A stretch of DNA of 64,000 nt, taken from positions 62,001 through 126,000 of IMG/VR virus record IMGVR_UViG_3300044821_000131, one strand, 5' to 3'. Position 1 is the first letter of the stretch; each line of letters starts with the position of its first letter. A model generated the notes under the pieces. The model made no database searches, was not told the DNA's origin, and saw nothing but the letters and a program-made list of their open reading frames with translations. Both the position numbers and the translations under genes were made by a program. Below, piece by piece: positions 12,603 through 47,740 of this stretch.

Positions 12603-12908
12603 ATGAACTACACATCGAAAGTAACCGAATGCCTGGGCTGTCCGCCGGGTGATCCTGATGTCTTTGCCAGATACGTCGCCAGTCTTCATCCGGAGGGTAA
12701 AGCTGCATCGAATGAATGTGCTGTGTCCGAGTGTGCTTTACCCGAAGTGACTACAGGCATTTTGGAGGCATACGTGTCGGACATCTATAAAGCAGCAGCA
12801 ATCAATCCCGGTGGTTGGGACGAGCAAAGAATCAAGAACTTCATTCGAGCCGTGCTGCAGTCATACGCTGAGTCGACTTGGAAAACTCGACAAGAACGTT
12901 CTTCATGA
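12603..12908 (+). CDS. protein whose N-terminus is a copy of the neighbouring RAMP N-terminus
   Basis: 12621-12692 matches 13046-13117 at 59/72 nt (17/24 aa); the rest appears unrelated. Confidence 0.7.
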   Translation: MNYTSKVTECLGCPPGDPDVFARYVASLHPEGKAASNECAVSECALPEVTTGILEAYVSDIYKAAAINPGGWDEQRIKNFIRAVLQSYAESTWKTRQERSS

Positions 12909-13018: not shown

Positions 13019-13687
13019 ATGATACTCAAAATCCACAGTGTTCTCGTAACCGAATGCATGGGCACCAAACCGGCTGACCCTGATGTCTTTGCCAAATACA
13101 TTGGCAGTCTTCATCCGTCCGGCACCGTTCAGCGTGACGAACTGGATAACGCCAAGGCCCGTGAAGCCACGGGCACCACGATCTTTCATCGTGACGTCTC
13201 CGACGACGCCCCCATCATCTATGACTATCAGGTCAAAGGCTTCATCAAGGCGGCCTGCACCGCCACTAACCGCTTCGACAAGGAATACCGTAACGGCCTG
13301 GGCAAGCTGACGGCCTGTCGCGCCAAGATCACGGAGGCATTGTTCATCAAGCCCCGGATCATTCGAATGGAAATGCCCAAGGGTCTGGAACGCGGCGTTT
13401 GTGAACGCCCGTTGATCGCCGAGACCGCCCAGGGCAAACGCGTGACAGTGGTGCGTTCCGAAACGGTTCCGGCCGGCACGGTGCTCGACTTCGAGATCCA
13501 CCTCTTCGCCAAGGAGCTTCTGCCCCATCTCAAAGTGTGGTTGAACTACGGCCTGATGATCGGTCTCGGCCAATGGCGTAACAGCGGCAAGGGCCAGTTC
13601 AAATGGGAACTGATGAACCCGGAAGTGCTGCCTACGCCTGACGCCATGGACAAAGTGCCCAAGTCGGAAGACGCGGGCGAAGAATAA
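13019..13687 (+). CDS. solitary Cas7/RAMP-fold protein (Csf2/Csm3-like, Vipr-like)
   Basis: N-terminal strand LVTECMGT; GTTIFHRD..PIIYDYQVKGFIKAAC; CERPL.AETAQGKR..V.SE.VPAGT..FEI; C-terminal glycine-rich loop GLGQWRNSGKGQF. No other cas genes in the window. Confidence 0.85.
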   Translation: MILKIHSVLVTECMGTKPADPDVFAKYIGSLHPSGTVQRDELDNAKAREATGTTIFHRDVSDDAPIIYDYQVKGFIKAACTATNRFDKEYRNGLGKLTACRAKITEALFIKPRIIRMEMPKGLERGVCERPLIAETAQGKRVTVVRSETVPAGTVLDFEIHLFAKELLPHLKVWLNYGLMIGLGQWRNSGKGQFKWELMNPEVLPTPDAMDKVPKSEDAGEE

Positions 13688-13711
13688 ATTCAGTTCGCGA
13701 ATATCTGTCAT

Positions 13712-13753
13712 TGCCCGGGCCTTGATACAGGGCTCGGGCATTGAACTTTTCAA
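13712..13753 (+). terminator. GC-rich hairpin (plus small AT hairpin) between RAMP gene and array
   Basis: TGCCCGGGCCTTG-ATA-CAGGGCTCGGGCA (13 bp, two GU), then TTGAA-CTT-TTCAA; terminator or processing site. Confidence 0.5.
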
Positions 13754-13800
13754 ATAACTGCTTCGCCGCTAATCCCGGTGAGGTCGATTATCCTTTAAAG

Positions 13801-14991
13801 CAAAGTGCAGGCAGAGTTTAGTTGGGTAATGGTTTGGTAAGGTCACGTGTGGTCGTGTGAGGGTATAGTCAGGTTAGGTACTGGTCAAGTTAAGCGTGGT
13901 GCTGGCGAAGTGCGGTATTGTGTAGCGTCGGCAAGGTAATGTTACGCGTGGTGACGGCAAAGTAATGTTACGCGTCGTGACGGCAACGTATCGTTTAGTT
14001 AAGGTAAAGTAAGGTGGAGCGCAGTGCAGGTAATGTTACGCGGTGTGAGGGCAACGTATCGTCTAGTTAAGGTAAAGTACAGTGGTGTGATGGTCAGGTT
14101 TGGCCTTGTGCGGGTACGGCAAAGTATAGTTCGGTATTGGCAAAGTTTCGTATTGTGAGGGTAAGGTAAAGTCTGGTCACGTAACGGTAAGGCGTGGTCG
14201 TGTGAGGGCATCGTAAAGTTCTGTCTTGTCTTGGCACTGTAAAGTTCAGTGCTGGCGTGGTGCAGTCGTGTGGAGGCACTGTTTGGTAGCGCGCAGGTAA
14301 AGTAGAGTGCCGTGCCGTGCTGGTAAGGTCTCGATATGCGAAGTGATGGCAAAGTTCTGTTGCGTGTCGGCAAAGTTGAGTCGTGTAACGGCAAAGTCCG
14401 GTCGTGTAACGGCAAAGTCCAGTCCTGTGTCGGCGTAGTGCAGTCCAGTCGTGTCACGGTTTGGTATAGTACAGTGAAGTGCTGGCGTGGTACAGTCCCG
14501 TTAAGGCCCTGTTTGGTAAAGTGAAGTGGGGGCAAAGTTCTGTGTTGTGTCGGCAATGCAAAGTATCGCGCAGTGCAGGCAATGTACAGTTCCGTTCGGG
14601 TCATGTTAGGTGCAGTATAGGCAAGGTCAAGCGCAGTGCAGGCAACGTCAAGTGCAGTAAAGGCGAAGTCATGTTAGGTGCCGTGAAGGCAACGTATGGT
14701 GGCGTTCGGTTTGGGTATGGTATCGTGCAGTGAGGTGAAGGCTAAGTATGGCGCCGTAGAGGCAAGGTTGGGTCCCGCAGAGTGATGGTATGGTCAAGTA
14801 TAGTGCGGTGAAGTGACGGCAAAGTTCAGTAACGTAACGTGAAGGCAAAGTGTGGTAACGTGGTGTGATGGCCGAGTACCGTATCGTCACGTGCGGGCAT
14901 AGTGCCGTGAGGTGAAGGCAACGTGCCGCATCGTCACGTGAGGGCAGAGTAGCGTATCGTCACGTGCGGGCAAAGTATGGGTTATGTTGGC
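13801..14991 (+). ncRNA. pentamer-periodic array [NN-NGY]n punctuated by NN-NGGY hexamers; candidate guide RNA for the RAMP
   Basis: 14581 onward parses as aa-tgt ac-agt tc-cgt tc-gggt ca-tgt ta-ggt gc-agt at-aggc aa-ggt ca-agc gc-agt gc-aggc; the register held throughout where I parsed it; 5- and 26-nt periods are not codon multiples. Confidence 0.8.
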
Positions 14992-15009
14992 ACACACCGG
15001 GTGATTGAG

Positions 15010-15093
15010 GCTTGCACGGCACGGATTTTAAAGATCAGCAGTGCCCCATAGTTTCTAACACTGATCCCGTCCGCCCGTGCAAGCTTCTTTTCT
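15010..15093 (+). terminator. long hairpin with U-tract closing the array transcript
   Basis: GCTTGCACGG (15010-15019) / CCGTGCAAGC (15075-15084), inner GATCAG/CTGATC, then TTCTTTTCT. Confidence 0.65.
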
Positions 15094-15118
15094 GAATTTT
15101 AATTTCCAGTAAATTTAT

Positions 15119-21953: not shown

Positions 21954-23180
21954 ATGTGTGATCACTCACGATTCGAAATTCATGCCACCGTTGATCGTCA
22001 AGTACACGATCAAAAACTCAAATCCCTAAATCTTAAACTCGCCGTCAAATGCGTCGACTGCGGTCAAGAATTCTATGTGGCCGGCACCGCACCGGACCTG
22101 ATACTTAAAGAAAGAGAACCAGATGGCACAGTCCACACCTACGCCGCCACCCGTACCTTGCCCGTACTCGACGTGGCATCCTCCATCACGCCACTGCCTC
22201 CGCTGAGCATCATCATACCCGTGCTCAACGATAAGGATGAGGCCAATGCAACAATTCGATCAATCCGCGCAACCTCGCCGCCGGATGTGGAAATTATCGT
22301 GGTCGACGATGCCTCAGACAACGTCCTGGTGATCGAGGATAAGTCCGCACGCCTGATTCGATACAAACAACGTATAGGTGCTGGAGCTGCACGCCACGCG
22401 GGGGCATTCGAAGCCAAAGCGCCCTACTTGCTGTTGCTCGACGCGCATATGCGCTTTGATCCCGGGTGGTATGAGCCGGCCATGGCACGTCTTCGTAATA
22501 CTAAACTGAACGTCGTGTGGTGTGCTGCTTGTATGGGCCTTAGCGAGGAAAATATGGAGCTGACGCCACATACGCCGATGTACACTGGTGCTGATCTGAT
22601 CTTCTGGGACCCGATTACCAAGCGGGTGTTCGAAGGCGTGTGGCGTCCGGAGGTTCAACACGCGGACGACTATGAGATTCAGTGTTTGATGGGTGCTTGT
22701 TACTTTATGCGTCGCGATTGGTTCTTTCACATTCATGGTCTTGAGTGGAACAGGAAATGGGGCAGCGAAGAACCTTTTCTCTCGTTGAAGACTTGGCTGG
22801 CCGGCGGAACAGTGCGTCTGATGAAGAGCGTCAAGATCGGCCACAAGTTCCGCAATTCCACCCCGTACTCGACCGAGCTGTCCAGCATACTGTACAATAA
22901 GATCCGGGCGATGAAGGAACTGCTGCCCGACGAGCTGTACCAGTTTCTGCTCGCCAAGATCCCGGATGACAAAAACAAGTTTAGTGCTTTACAGCAAGTG
23001 AAATTCAGCGACGCGGACATCACTGAGGAGCAGGCATACTATAAAAAGATTTTCACACATGATGTGTACTGGTTCTTCGAGAAGTTCGGGATTAAGAATC
23101 CGCTTGACGAAACTAAGCTCGATGGTAATGTAACTTTGAGTGGCGGGTTGGCGCAGCCTGGCAGCGCGCAAGTCTCATAA
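21954..23180 (+). CDS. GT-A glycosyltransferase, polypeptide GalNAc-transferase-like (GT2/GT27)
   Basis: SIIIP, EIIVVDDAS, LLLLDAHMRFDPGW (DxH), and MGACYFMRRDWF...WGSEEPFLSLKTWLAGG...IGHKFR, which parallels the ppGalNAc-T WGGENxELSFRxWxCGG...VGHxFR block. Confidence 0.8.
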   Translation: MCDHSRFEIHATVDRQVHDQKLKSLNLKLAVKCVDCGQEFYVAGTAPDLILKEREPDGTVHTYAATRTLPVLDVASSITPLPPLSIIIPVLNDKDEANATIRSIRATSPPDVEIIVVDDASDNVLVIEDKSARLIRYKQRIGAGAARHAGAFEAKAPYLLLLDAHMRFDPGWYEPAMARLRNTKLNVVWCAACMGLSEENMELTPHTPMYTGADLIFWDPITKRVFEGVWRPEVQHADDYEIQCLMGACYFMRRDWFFHIHGLEWNRKWGSEEPFLSLKTWLAGGTVRLMKSVKIGHKFRNSTPYSTELSSILYNKIRAMKELLPDELYQFLLAKIPDDKNKFSALQQVKFSDADITEEQAYYKKIFTHDVYWFFEKFGIKNPLDETKLDGNVTLSGGLAQPGSAQVS

Positions 23181-23218
23181 ACTTGAGGTCGTTGGTTCAA
23201 ATCCAACATCCGCTCCCA
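23142..23218 (+). tRNA. tRNA with CAU anticodon (elongator Met or Ile2), CCA encoded
   Basis: Acceptor GGCGGGT/ATCCGCT, D arm GCGC/GCGC, anticodon CAAGT-CTCATAA-ACTTG, T arm GTTGG-TTCAAAT-CCAAC; lacks initiator hallmarks. Confidence 0.9.
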
Positions 23219-30155: not shown

Positions 30156-30608
30156 ATGCCTGATCTCATAATCGGTATCTCAGTCCTGCAACCTACTTGG
30201 ATCGATAAGGTCTATCGACTCTGGTTTCAAGCCCAGAAAGCCGACGGCGCAAAAAATCAAGGCTGGATCTTCGCCGTCGATAGCACGTCGGCCAGTACCT
30301 TGACCAAGATGCCCGAATACCCGGATGGCTGTAACTCGATCTGGCACTTCACCAGGCAGGGCGACACACTCAACTGCTCACCTTCGGTGAATTGGATATC
30401 TTGGGGTTTCCACAATGCTGGTAGCTGGACGACGCGCTATGTCGAGATGACCATCGCGGAACAGTCCATGTCGAAAGCGGGCGATGATACCGGCGAAGTC
30501 CCTACACGTTTGCGTATTGGACACACGGTTCATTACGATCTGAATAATGGTGCGGCCGATCCTCAGCAGGTGATCGCCGAGTACCGTCAGAAAGGGGTCC
30601 TGAAGTGA
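30156..30608 (+). CDS. hypothetical protein (DUF6527-like segment)
   Basis: WHFTRQGDTLNCSPSVNW. Confidence 0.6.
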   Translation: MPDLIIGISVLQPTWIDKVYRLWFQAQKADGAKNQGWIFAVDSTSASTLTKMPEYPDGCNSIWHFTRQGDTLNCSPSVNWISWGFHNAGSWTTRYVEMTIAEQSMSKAGDDTGEVPTRLRIGHTVHYDLNNGAADPQQVIAEYRQKGVLK

Positions 30609-32524
30609 ATCGGGCAGCACTCAGAGATGGACAATTCGCTGAGGTGCCCGATAAGGACATCGACTTTGAATTCACCTCTCCCAATCAATTTCTCGGCACC
30701 CATGCCAACTTGATCCCATTGCAGTCCGCAGTACAAGGTGGACGCCTGTTCTACGGCGCTCGATTCGCCAATCAGGCGTTGCCGATCAATAACTCGGAGG
30801 CCCCACTCGTACAGCTAAAGTCAGACGATGATCCGCAAGGCCGATCCTTCGACGAAATCCTCGGCGCCTCGGCTGGCGCCGTACACGCCAAACATGCCGG
30901 TACTGTACATGCTGTTACGCCAGACCATGTTATCGTTAAAACCAAGGATGGAGAAAAAGTGACACACGGATTGTACAACGAATTTCCGTATAACAGAAAG
31001 ACGAAGATCCACAACACTCCGGCGATTAAACCCGGGGATACTGTGGTCCCCGGACAGCTCCTCGCTCATTCCAATTTTACGGACAAGCACGGCACTCTGG
31101 CGCTAGGACTCAATGCTCGCGTCGGACTCGTGCCGTATCTTGGTCGCTCCATGGACGACGCGATTGTGATCAGTGAATCCTTTGCTAAACGTCTGGCCAG
31201 CAACCATGCCTACGGCTACGATCTCGACTACAAGCGTGGTGTGAAGGGCGGCAAAGCGCATCATGTCGGGCTGTTTCCCAACAAGTTCATTAATGACCAG
31301 TTAGATAAGCTGGACGATGAGGGGATCGTGAAGCCGGGACAGATTGTTAATCCTGGTGATCCGATCATCTTGGCCACGCGGCCACGCGTTGTGTCCTCAG
31401 CTTCGGCGCAGTTGGGTCTTCTGTCCAAACATATGAAGAACGCGCGCACGGATGCTTCCGTTCTATGGGAGCACGAAACTCCCGGGCGTGTGGTGGATGT
31501 CCACCGCGGTCGTGGTGGGGTGAAATTGAATATCCATACGGATGTGCCTACGCAGGTGGGCGATAAGCTCGCATTCAGAAGCGGAGGCAAGGCGGTTATA
31601 TCCACCATCCTACCAGACGAACACGTACCGCGCACGGCAGATGGCCAGCCATTGGAGGTTCTGCTAAATCCTCAGAGCATACCATCCCGGGTCAATCCGT
31701 CCTTGGTCTATGAGCTCCTGCTCGGCAAGGTCGCAAAGAAAACCGGACGCCCCTACAAACTGCCAGCCTTTACCAAGAACGGCGAAGCCTGGCACAATGT
31801 CGTCAAAAAAGAACTGGATGATAACGGCCTCACCGATACCGAAGACGTCTTTGACCCCCTCCTGAATAAAAAACTCGAGAACCCCATCACCGTCGGTAAT
31901 GGCTATGTCCTGAAATTACACCACACATCCGCCAGCAAGATAAGTGCTAGAGGTCAAGGTAGTTACAGCTCAGATCAGGAGCCGCTTCATGGTGGTGGTG
32001 AGGGTGGGCAGGGCAAGCGGTTATCGGGACTCGAGTCGGGTGCGTTATTGTCATCTGGGGCGTACGGGGTATTACGGGATGGTGCTACGGTACGTGGGAC
32101 ACGCAACGATCAATTTTGGCGGCAGTTACGTGCGGGGCAGGATCCGGCTGAGCCTGGCAGTTCGTTTGCGTGGGAGAAGTTCCGTGCTTTGTTACAGGGG
32201 TCTGGTTATCAGGCGCGCAAGCTCGGGGCTGGTCGGGAGCGTTTAGGTTTTTGGACGGACAAGGATTTAGCGGAGCGCAAGCCGATCAAGGTGAAGACCG
32301 GGGATATTGTGGATTTGAATTCCCTAGACCCAGTTCGAGGTGGGCTATTTGATCCGGCCCTGACGGGCAATCAGAGCTGGGGTTCGATCGATCTACCCAC
32401 CGCGTTACCAAACCCGGCGGCCGAGGATGTGATTTGCAAGATGTTGGGGCTTACGAATGCGCAGTATCGAAGGATACTGGCTGGAGAAGAGTCTTTACCC
32501 GAGCATTTGCTTCATCCACAATAG
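30605..32524 (+). CDS. rpoB: phage RNA polymerase: beta C-terminal half fused to a beta' N-terminal segment
   Basis: NLIPLQ...RFANQALP, LALGLNARVG..Y.G..MDDAIVISE, GDKLAFRSGGKAVIS.I...P...DG.P.EVLLNP..IPSRVN, YVLKLHH..KISAR; then beta'-like GGLFDP..TG...WGSIDLP. Confidence 0.9.
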   Translation: MNRAALRDGQFAEVPDKDIDFEFTSPNQFLGTHANLIPLQSAVQGGRLFYGARFANQALPINNSEAPLVQLKSDDDPQGRSFDEILGASAGAVHAKHAGTVHAVTPDHVIVKTKDGEKVTHGLYNEFPYNRKTKIHNTPAIKPGDTVVPGQLLAHSNFTDKHGTLALGLNARVGLVPYLGRSMDDAIVISESFAKRLASNHAYGYDLDYKRGVKGGKAHHVGLFPNKFINDQLDKLDDEGIVKPGQIVNPGDPIILATRPRVVSSASAQLGLLSKHMKNARTDASVLWEHETPGRVVDVHRGRGGVKLNIHTDVPTQVGDKLAFRSGGKAVISTILPDEHVPRTADGQPLEVLLNPQSIPSRVNPSLVYELLLGKVAKKTGRPYKLPAFTKNGEAWHNVVKKELDDNGLTDTEDVFDPLLNKKLENPITVGNGYVLKLHHTSASKISARGQGSYSSDQEPLHGGGEGGQGKRLSGLESGALLSSGAYGVLRDGATVRGTRNDQFWRQLRAGQDPAEPGSSFAWEKFRALLQGSGYQARKLGAGRERLGFWTDKDLAERKPIKVKTGDIVDLNSLDPVRGGLFDPALTGNQSWGSIDLPTALPNPAAEDVICKMLGLTNAQYRRILAGEESLPEHLLHPQ

Positions 32525-46811: not shown

Positions 46812-47456
46812 ATGCCATTCGACACTCAAGTCTTCAAAGAACTGATGACCTCGTTATCAGAACTCCGCGCCGATCTGAAAAAACAAGCGTTCGTCCCGAT
46901 GCCTGGGGATATGCCGCCGGGTGGTGGTCAAGGCGGCCCTCCGCAGGGCGGACCTGGCGGACCTCCTCCGGGAATGGATCCTTCACAGATGCAGGGTGGT
47001 GGCGGGCCTCCTCCGGGAATGGACCCGTCGCAGATGCAGGGTGGTGGTGATCCTTCTCAAGGTGGTGGCGGACCTCCGGGAATGCCGCCTGGCGCCGCGC
47101 CTGGTGGTTCTGGTGACCCGGCTGGAGGTTCTGATCCCTATGGTCCTGTATTCGAATCCATTCTGCAGGGCATGCAGCAGTTGATGGAAACTGTGCAACA
47201 GATGGGTCAGGAGTTTGATCAGCGCCTGGCAAAATCTGAGCAGGAGTTGCAACAGATGACGCAGGTACAGCAGCAGACTGATGATCAGATGAAGCAGATT
47301 CAGCCATTGGTGCAGCAGATGCTGCAGCCGGCACCGATGGACGGTTCAATTCAGGGTCAAGCTCCGCAAGGGGCCGGCGCGGATCAAGGTATGCTGCCGG
47401 ATCAGAGCGGTGGACCTCCGATGTCGGCGCCGGGTGAAATGGGAATGATGCAATGA
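46812..47456 (+). CDS. G/P/Q/M-rich low-complexity protein with coiled coil
   Basis: KKQAFVP, repeated GGPPPGMDPSQMQGGG, Q-rich helix. Confidence 0.8.
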   Translation: MPFDTQVFKELMTSLSELRADLKKQAFVPMPGDMPPGGGQGGPPQGGPGGPPPGMDPSQMQGGGGPPPGMDPSQMQGGGDPSQGGGGPPGMPPGAAPGGSGDPAGGSDPYGPVFESILQGMQQLMETVQQMGQEFDQRLAKSEQELQQMTQVQQQTDDQMKQIQPLVQQMLQPAPMDGSIQGQAPQGAGADQGMLPDQSGGPPMSAPGEMGMMQ

Positions 47457-47740
47457 ACAACGCCGATAAACTTTTCGTCGCCGCGGCCATCTTGATCAAA
47501 GACGCGGCAACGGCGCCGTCCAACATGGGCGGCACGGGAACGATGCCGATGGCTTCGATGATGCAACAGATGTCGTCCTCCGTGGCCAAGAGCCCGCTGG
47601 AGGCTACGTCCATGAACCCGATGGGTGCGTCAGGCGGCATGCTGGCGCAATGGGGCAGCAAGATGAATATGCCACTGGCATCGCTGTTGAATAATTGGAA
47701 GATGCAGATGGCTTCGAACAAGGGTCGAGCTCTGTTCTAA
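47453..47740 (+). CDS. small Met-rich K-x-A-type protein
   Basis: ILIKDAA. Confidence 0.6.
   Translation: MNNADKLFVAAAILIKDAATAPSNMGGTGTMPMASMMQQMSSSVAKSPLEATSMNPMGASGGMLAQWGSKMNMPLASLLNNWKMQMASNKGRALF

What the first reader, a model, noticed from the sequence alone, without database searches (positions are those of the whole stretch)
13801..14991. Second-order grammar in the array: hexamer punctuation defines 21/26/31-nt segments that duplicate locally
Seen: roughly every 3-5 pentamers a 6-nt unit with an extra G (NN-NGGC/NGGT) breaks the register. It is often preceded by GA or GC and followed by AA (e.g. GA-CGGC-AA-AGT). Segments are copied locally: 13929-13954 vs 13955-13980 differ only at two first positions of NGY trimers; 13981-14010 vs 14049-14078; GTCGTGTAACGGCAAAGTCC twice near 14380-14420; ATCGTCACGTG three times in 14880-14970. 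Inference: the hexamer may be a processing site or filament boundary that yields many short guides, with diversification by slippage or recombination rather than spacer acquisition.
Basis: partly seen in the sequence, partly recalled or inferred. Interest (0 to 1): 0.75.

Follow-up and report, generated by a model that had tools for sequence, protein, structure and literature searches.

The report
Hexamer-punctuated VIPR guide-RNA array
The 1.2-kb array is the guide-RNA array of a phage VIPR system (a recently described CRISPR-like, RAMP-protein-based system), and the extra-G hexamers are real, conserved delimiters that cut it into about 50 short modules of 21 or 26 nt, which are gained, lost and duplicated as whole units.

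Summary
Window 13813-14971 parses without exception into 173 pentamers NNNG[T/C] and 49 hexamers NNNGG[C/T]. This gives 25 segments of 21 nt, 22 of 26 nt and 2 of 31 nt. The flanking biases are significant and all four quoted local copies are exact.

The array lies 110 nt downstream of ORF 13019-13687, on the same strand. This ORF is a minimal RAMP protein. Its predicted fold best matches four of the five founding Vipr accessions of the 2026 VIPR preprints. The locus is therefore a VIPR system with the non-canonical xGY/NN (YNNNG) repeat, carried on a 204-kb jumbo phage.

The hexamer grammar is family-wide. In 69 non-redundant related arrays, hexamers (consensus AA-x-GGC) recur every 5-7 units. 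Arrays usually open with a lone delimiter and often end on one. Related arrays differ by whole segments. A near-identical relative carries a 21-nt one-segment tandem duplication.

My best reading is that each hexamer is a +1 register break that ends one short Vipr filament or guide and starts the next. This probably corresponds to the preprint's untested "staggered arrays". No RNA data and no targets were obtained, so boundary versus internal bulge stays open. This is a new member of a known kind.

The parts
13019..13687 (+). vipr gene: a 222-aa minimal RAMP protein with the C-terminal G-loop GLGQWRNSGKGQF
   Evidence: There are no Pfam or PHROG hits. It has 230 or more homologues and 2036 cluster representatives at E<=1e-3. 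The AF2 model has pLDDT 79. The top AFDB fold hits are A0A1F4YLN4, X1U2U4, A0A2D6XG06 and A0A0F9A1L0, which are founding Vipr accessions. The top PDB hits are Csm3/Cas7. The G-loop aligns to SUSP1 Vipr D177-W178-R179 as Q-W-R.
12603..12908 (+). 101-aa ORF that is a paralogue of the N-terminal ~80 residues of Vipr (a truncated duplicate or a stand-alone helical piece)
   Evidence: BLASTP against Vipr gives 40% identity over 81 aa, E 1e-13.
13708..13745 (+). Strong hairpin between vipr and the array
   Evidence: strand folding gives z -4.8 against shuffles.
13797..13812 (+). Array leader: two pentamers plus the first hexamer (a lone delimiter)
   Evidence: Parse. Related arrays likewise open with 1-3 units ending in a hexamer.
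13813..14971 (+). 49 hexamer-terminated segments (25 x 21 nt, 22 x 26 nt, 2 x 31 nt) of xGY/NN pentamers
14972..14987 (+). Terminal short units after the last full segment (AAAGT ATGGGT TATGT)
   Evidence: L004 ends in a similar way.
15007..15100 (+). Long hairpin followed by a U-rich tract, a probable end of the array transcript
   Evidence: strand folding. The z-score is only -1.4, so this is weak.

Best explanation
This is the vrRNA array of a phage-encoded VIPR system.

Shown:
- The adjacent gene is a Vipr-fold RAMP protein.
- The array is a tandem pentamer scaffold with an invariant G, a following pyrimidine, and three variable bases (xGY/NN, i.e. YNNNG).
- It sits on the vipr strand and the RNA is predicted to be unstructured.
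- Every +1 register shift is a hexamer carrying a canonical GGY preceded by three rather than two variable bases.
- Hexamers are evenly spaced, have their own flanking consensus, are conserved throughout this Vipr clade, and bracket the units that are gained, lost and duplicated.

Inferred from the published SUSP1 structures:
- In those structures one protomer binds each 5 nt. The second G sits in a strict pocket and the next base in a pocket that excludes purines.
- A filament locked to a 5-nt register therefore cannot run through a hexamer.
- The long transcript would then be partitioned into about 50 short Vipr-RNA modules of 4-5 protomers. That is roughly one turn of the target-bound helix.
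- The modules are probably separated by trimming at the exposed junction.
- Each module presents its NN (and possibly x) bases for gapped pairing with DNA of competing elements.

New modules arise by tandem duplication and recombination at the conserved delimiters, followed by point changes at the variable bases. They do not arise by spacer acquisition.
For: Vipr identity: with the accession list.

Gene-array linkage: a 5-nt G periodicity lies directly next to the homologue in nearly all of 80 viral loci and in L087 and L088.

Repeat type: YNNNG is listed as an alternative vrRNA repeat in the preprint.

Hexamer regularity and flanks.

Family-wide grammar: 1023 hexamers, mode 6 units per segment, consensus GC|AAxGGC|A. 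It persists in AT-rich clades with 38% identical Vipr.

Lone delimiter at array starts and hexamer at array ends.

Whole-segment differences among related arrays: indel peaks at 26/31/36/41, 57/62/67 and 88 nt.

Near-identical relatives: a 21-nt one-segment duplication, and 7 SNVs in X2/X3, of which the six I mapped onto the parse (three at N1, three at x) avoid the invariant G and the following pyrimidine.

Variation between near-identical segments falls at N1, N2 and x, almost never at G.

The array RNA folds worse than its shuffles, z +1.9.

Structural basis for a register lock. Canonical SUSP1 vrRNAs have about 15 uninterrupted pentamers and a tail.

Against: - There is no RNA evidence. 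No RNA run was listed, and the preprint did not confirm staggered arrays by sRNA-seq.
- I could not see the preprint's Fig. S18, so equating it with the hexamers is my reading of its legend.
- Information per segment is low: 12.8 or 16.3 bits in NN, plus 7-9 bits in x.
- Single-segment NN patterns hit the phage's own genome 174 times, equal to the null.
- No target was found under any rule.
- Hexamer spacing of roughly one helical turn would also fit an internal strain-relief role.
- No vap accessory gene was recognised.
Confidence: 0.6

Rival explanations
1. This is a VIPR array, but the hexamers are internal features of long filaments. The extra base is bulged, or it pairs with the otherwise skipped target base. 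This would relieve helical strain about once per turn, so several segments (or the whole 1.2 kb) act as one guide or scaffold.
For: - The target-bound filament has 5 protomers and about 25 nt of RNA per turn. Hexamers recur every 4-5 units here and every 5-7 in relatives.
- Single segments carry too little information for specific recognition.
Against: - Spacing varies within one array (4, 5 or 6 units).
- Canonical 12-16-repeat vrRNAs need no hexamer.
- The NN positions flanking hexamers are semi-conserved. A continuous guide would then demand fixed dinucleotides in its targets.
- Arrays open with a lone delimiter.
- A 12-unit pattern crossing two hexamers found nothing in metagenome contigs. 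This is weak evidence because the match had to be exact.
Confidence: 0.22
2. The 21/26-nt pattern is only a historical footprint of repeated duplication of an ancestral unit, and the extra G has no function.
For: Tandem duplicates of one to three segments are frequent.
Against: - GG is present at 49 of 49 shifts here and at 96-99% of 1023 hexamers in arrays whose variable parts are unrelated and whose Vipr proteins are 36-60% identical.
- Hexamer flanks and the final base differ from those of pentamers.
Confidence: 0.05
3. It is a DNA-level element, such as iterons, a centromere-like site, or 10.5-bp phased bending (21 bp equals two helical turns), bound by a DNA-binding protein.
For: 5.25 bp is half a B-DNA turn.
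Against: - There is strong strand asymmetry (GC skew 0.36), with the G-rich strand always that of vipr.
- The partner protein has a RAMP RNA-binding fold.
- Spacings of 26, 31 and 36 nt in relatives do not keep helical phase.
Confidence: 0.03
4. It is protein-coding sequence, for example the 201-aa minus-strand ORF 13999-14604.
For: An open frame exists.
Against: - There is no 3-nt periodicity: the G autocorrelation is negative or near zero at lags 3, 6 and 9, against 0.44 at lag 5.
- The 26-nt units break any frame.
Confidence: 0.01

Closest known systems
VIPR systems (Vipr + vrRNA), bioRxiv 10.64898/2026.04.26.720920 and 10.64898/2026.04.26.720927; characterised type II of phage SUSP1
   Same: - Phage-encoded small RAMP protein with a G-loop (W and R conserved).
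- Adjacent, co-oriented tandem pentamers with a fixed trinucleotide core and hypervariable dinucleotides.
- No adaptation genes.
   Different: - The core here is xGY (YNNNG) rather than GGY. The residue that contacts the first G in SUSP1 (D177) is Q in this clade.
- There are no per-guide promoters and no 3' pseudoknot tails.
- One 1.2-kb uninterrupted array is cut by hexamers into 4-5-repeat modules, instead of separate vrRNAs of 9-16 repeats.
- No vap gene was recognised.
'Staggered vrRNA arrays' of the same preprint (Fig. S18, legend only)
   Same: The legend describes adjacent vrRNAs with a 1-nt overlap, where the end of one marks the start of the next. This is what a GG-hexamer produces if runs of 5-nt units are read in successive registers.
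   Different: - I could not see the figure, and the paper did not confirm this architecture by sRNA-seq.
- None of the four papers read mentions hexamers, 21/26-nt units or flanking consensus.
Class 1 CRISPR arrays and Cas7 backbones
   Same: - RAMP fold, best PDB matches Csm3/Cas7.
- Conserved delimiters flank the variable parts, which fits n+1 delimiters for n parts.
- Cassette-like gain and loss of units.
   Different: - The period is 5 nt, not 6.
- The delimiter is about 11 nt and non-palindromic.
- The variable part keeps the G-Y scaffold.
- No cas1, cas2 or other conserved genes were found, and units are about 21-36 nt.
TIGR-Tas arrays
   Same: Short-period phage-associated guide arrays with very short specificity segments.
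   Different: TIGR arrays have an 18-nt period and a Nop-domain effector. Here the period is 5 nt and the effector is a RAMP.

Membership tests
VIPR | Vipr protein: small single-RRM RAMP with a glycine-rich loop and thumb | tested here: met
   The AF2 model (pLDDT 79) matches A0A1F4YLN4 (E 2e-10), X1U2U4, A0A2D6XG06 and A0A0F9A1L0. These are four of the five founding accessions. PDB matches are Csm3/Cas7. The G-loop aligns to the SUSP1 Vipr W178/R179. Profile-level sequence similarity to SUSP1 Vipr is weak (probability 23%).
VIPR | Tandem pentanucleotide repeats with a conserved core and hypervariable NN, next to vipr and on its strand | tested here: met
   222 units with an invariant G and 90% T (10% C) at the next base in pentamers. 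The same linkage is seen in about 80 loci. The core is the xGY (YNNNG) variant listed, not the canonical GGY.
VIPR | Mostly viral or proviral location | tested here: met
   The window is part of a 204,257-bp IMG/VR record with direct terminal repeats. It encodes an RNA polymerase beta-like subunit.
VIPR | vap accessory gene beside vipr | tested here: inconclusive
   No neighbour other than vipr is conserved across loci. The upstream ORF 12603-12908 is a partial vipr paralogue.
VIPR | vrRNAs expressed and bound by Vipr | not testable with these tools
   No RNA run was listed.
VIPR | Natural targets matching NN with a 1-nt skip | tested here: inconclusive
   No enrichment appeared in the phage's own genome or in 2 Mb of related loci. 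Exact-pattern scans gave no hits or chance-like hits.
VIPR type II (SUSP1-like) | Separate vrRNAs of 9-16 repeats, each capped by a conserved 3' tail or pseudoknot | tested here: not met
   There are no tails between segments and one terminal hairpin only.
VIPR 'staggered array' architecture | Adjacent vrRNAs overlapping by 1 nt, with no intervening tail or ribozyme | tested here: inconclusive
   The sequence logic fits: the hexamer G is shared between two 5-nt registers. The figure was not available, and the Rfam scan found no ribozyme.
CRISPR-Cas | Direct repeats of about 23-50 nt separated by unique spacers, with cas1/cas2 adaptation genes | tested here: not met
   The period is 5 nt with roughly 11-nt delimiters. 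No conserved neighbours were found. There is no anti-repeat.

The most novel reading that the evidence does not exclude
The hexamer-delimited modules are real stand-alone guides of only 4-5 repeats. Specific recognition would then have to come from a code other than the published NN with 1-nt skip. Either the third variable base (x) is also read, giving three bases per repeat, or many beads-on-a-string modules of one transcript bind cooperatively. If so, this very large Vipr clade (2036 cluster representatives) would use a second, undescribed mode of noncontiguous RNA-guided recognition, and a self-delimiting array processed without a ribozyme, a tail or Cas6.
Probability: 0.3. Interest if true: 0.7.

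Novelty: new member of a known kind. Interest (0 to 1): 0.5.

Why it matters
VIPR is a months-old class of RNA-guided system, and only the tailed type II guides have been studied experimentally. This locus is an extreme example of a different array architecture: about 50 modules, the shortest segments seen here, on a jumbo phage. That architecture dominates a very large Vipr clade.

The comparisons done here supply testable rules:
- An extra G that creates a canonical GGY marks every register shift.
- A roughly 11-nt delimiter consensus flanks it.
- Delimiters bracket the variable parts (n+1 for n).
- Units turn over as whole cassettes.

These rules would let vrRNA units be called automatically in such arrays. 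They also pose a sharp question: how can 8-15 variable bases give specificity?

Tried and rejected
- Databases: the Rfam gathering scan found only tRNA-Met. BLASTN of the locus against the phage collection gave no match. Pfam and PHROGs gave no hit for Vipr or its neighbours.
- Coding reading of the minus-strand ORF: rejected, because there is no 3-nt periodicity.
- tracrRNA-like anti-repeat: none found in the window.
- Self-targeting or self-avoidance: no signal under seven pairing rules.
- Targets in 2 Mb of related loci: no enrichment over shuffled guides.
- Exact-pattern scans:
  - 10-unit NN? pattern from L005: 0 hits.
  - Conserved L033-group segment, contiguous triplets: 0 hits.
  - The same segment as triplet plus 1 skip: 4 unrelated, chance-like hits.
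  - Own 31-nt segment, contiguous: 0 hits.
  - 12-unit pattern crossing hexamers, in metagenomes: 0 hits.
  - Leader hairpin, used to fetch close relatives: 0 hits.
- Triplet (NNx) as the unit of change: two striking pairs in this array, but no clear clustering across the family, so this was dropped.
- RNA-end mapping: not possible, since no RNA run was listed.
- VIPR type (I-VII): could not be assigned from the text available.

Full report
**1. The observation.**

The region is strongly G- and T-rich on the + strand (G 431, T 305, A 263, C 192). G autocorrelation peaks at lags 5, 21, 26 and 31 and is negative at lags 3 and 9.

A dynamic-programming parse of 13813-14971 yields 173 pentamers and 49 hexamers and nothing else.
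- The fourth base is G in all 222 units.
- The last base of pentamers is T in 155 and C in 17.
- Hexamers end GGC in 33 cases and GGT in 16.
- Hexamers follow 3, 4 or 5 pentamers in 25, 22 and 2 cases, giving segments of 21, 26 and 31 nt.

None of 100,000 random placements of the hexamers gave such even spacing. The parse score is about 33 sd above shuffles.

A parser that does not ask for GG still finds GG at every one of the 49 register shifts. Only 23% of pentamers have G at the equivalent position.

**2. What it is.**

All genes around the array are on the + strand. The window is bases 62001-126000 of a 204,257-bp viral record with terminal repeats. The source appears to be a peat metagenome, and the phage encodes an RNA polymerase beta-like subunit.

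ORF 13019-13687 ends 110 nt upstream of the array.
- It has no Pfam or PHROG match.
- It has hundreds of homologues with an invariant C-terminal motif G-x-G-Q-W-R-N-S-G-K-G.
- A profile search finds 2036 cluster representatives.

In 80 viral loci fetched through this protein, nearly all carry a 5-nt G periodicity directly before or after the gene, on its strand.

A literature search led to the VIPR preprints.
- Vipr is a roughly 20-kDa RAMP protein that polymerises on vrRNAs made of GGY/NN pentamers.
- It binds with one protomer per repeat.
- The NN bases pair with DNA, skipping every third target base.
- Alternative repeats, including YNNNG, are listed.

The AlphaFold model of the window's protein (pLDDT 79) best matches A0A1F4YLN4, X1U2U4, A0A2D6XG06 and A0A0F9A1L0 in AFDB. 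These are four of the five accessions from which VIPR was defined. Among solved structures it best matches Csm3/Cas7.

Profile alignment to SUSP1 Vipr covers only the G-loop. There the W and R that hold the second G and the pyrimidine are conserved. The D that contacts the first G is Q in this clade. This fits the loss of the first G from the repeat core.

**3. The hexamer grammar is a property of the clade.**

All related arrays examined show the same punctuation. This includes the closest relatives (L087 and L088, about 60% identity) and AT-rich phages with 38% identical Vipr.

Pooled over 69 non-redundant arrays and 1023 hexamers:
- The spacing mode is 6 units (range 5-7), that is 26-36 nt.
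- The boundary consensus is G-C | A-A-x-G-G-C | A-(A/T)-x-G-C.

The window's array has the shortest segments (4-5 units) and one of the longest arrays. Canonical SUSP1 vrRNAs, by contrast, are about 15 uninterrupted pentamers followed by a structured tail.

**4. Segments behave as modules.**

- In a group of 25 related arrays, the same segments recur in different combinations, with whole segments present or absent.
- Pairwise alignments show long indels peaking at 26/31/36/41 nt, at 57/62/67 nt and at 88 nt, i.e. one, two and three segments.
- Contigs of two rhizosphere metagenomes hold a near-identical relative of this array. It carries a 21-nt insertion that is a tandem copy of one segment. 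It also has 7 single-base differences, of which the six I mapped onto the parse fall on variable positions (three at N1, three at x) and none on the invariant G or the following pyrimidine.
- Within the array, near-identical segments differ at N1, N2 and x in equal measure (8, 7 and 7 differences) and never at G. Family-wide the counts are N1 148, N2 156, x 101, Y 96 and G 31.
- Of 52 complete non-redundant arrays, 46 open with only 1-3 units before the first hexamer, and 24 end exactly on a hexamer. Delimiters thus bracket the variable parts, as repeats do in CRISPR arrays. These arrays are phylogenetically related, so the counts are not independent. The pattern is nevertheless seen in several clades.

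**5. Mechanism.**

The structural preprint shows three relevant features:
- The second G is clamped by R138 and W178.
- The following base sits in a pocket that excludes purines.
- The target-bound filament has five protomers and about 25 nt of RNA per turn.

In a hexamer x-G-G-Y, a filament continuing in the old 5-nt register would put a G in the pyrimidine pocket, and every later G would be out of place. I therefore infer that the hexamer ends one register-locked filament and that its canonical GGY starts the next.

This matches the legend of the preprint's 'staggered arrays': a 1-nt overlap, with the end of one vrRNA marking the start of another. The authors did not verify that architecture by RNA sequencing.

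Three further results are consistent with one long single-stranded precursor:
- The array RNA is predicted to be less structured than its shuffles.
- It is flanked by hairpins at 13708-13745 and 15007-15087.
- In many relatives the array starts at the vipr stop codon or ends at its ribosome-binding site.

**6. What remains open.**

- No RNA run was listed.
- Segments carry about 13 bits (21 nt) or 16 bits (26 nt) in NN, plus 7-9 bits in x.
- Single-segment NN patterns match the phage's own genome 174 times, which is exactly the null. One module cannot be specific under the published code.
- No target was found. Only exact patterns can be scanned in the large collections, so this is weak negative evidence.
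- The main rival is that hexamers are bulges inside long filaments, about one per helical turn. Arguments against it are the variable spacing, the semi-conserved NN beside hexamers, and the lone delimiter at array starts. It is not excluded.

**7. Verdict.**

It lacks RNA evidence. The system is VIPR, which is already described. The hexamer grammar is at most hinted at in one supplementary legend, and it is documented quantitatively here.

Noticed in passing
window 12603-12908 (+): A 101-aa ORF just upstream of vipr is a paralogue of the first ~80 residues of Vipr (40% identity, E 1e-13). It is either a truncated duplicate or a stand-alone helical piece, reminiscent of a small subunit. It is not found as a separate ORF in the related loci.
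   Followed up: partly
window 14216 and 14308-14312 (relatives in runs X2, X3): Near-identical arrays in two rhizosphere metagenomes carry a 21-nt tandem copy of one segment. They also have 44 letters replacing 3 at 14308-14312.
   Followed up: partly
L029 5589-5897 and 11982-12244 (also L027, L028): Some related phages carry two hexamer-punctuated arrays about 6 kb apart, one directly upstream of vipr and one far downstream.
   Followed up: no
L037 and about 25 related loci, mid-array: A conserved 4-nt unit (TATG) after a hexamer gives a -1 register shift in the middle of these arrays. The same TATGG string opens the array. It may mark a second start.
   Followed up: no
proteins P0122 (458 aa) and P0128 (432 aa): Some family members are double length and match the Vipr profile in two stretches. 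This suggests tandem-fused Vipr proteins.
   Followed up: no
window 23142-23218 (+): A tRNA-Met (CAT) gene overlaps the 3' end of the glycosyltransferase ORF 21954-23180.
   Followed up: no
window 30605-32524 (+): This ORF has an RNA polymerase Rpb2 domain 6 (E 4e-52), so the phage probably transcribes with its own polymerase. The sigma-70 promoter scan therefore says little about array transcription.
   Followed up: no
G000:C1 about 47350-47700 (outside the window): A weak 5-nt G periodicity (autocorrelation 0.26) without the 21/26 signal. It is probably chance.
   Followed up: no
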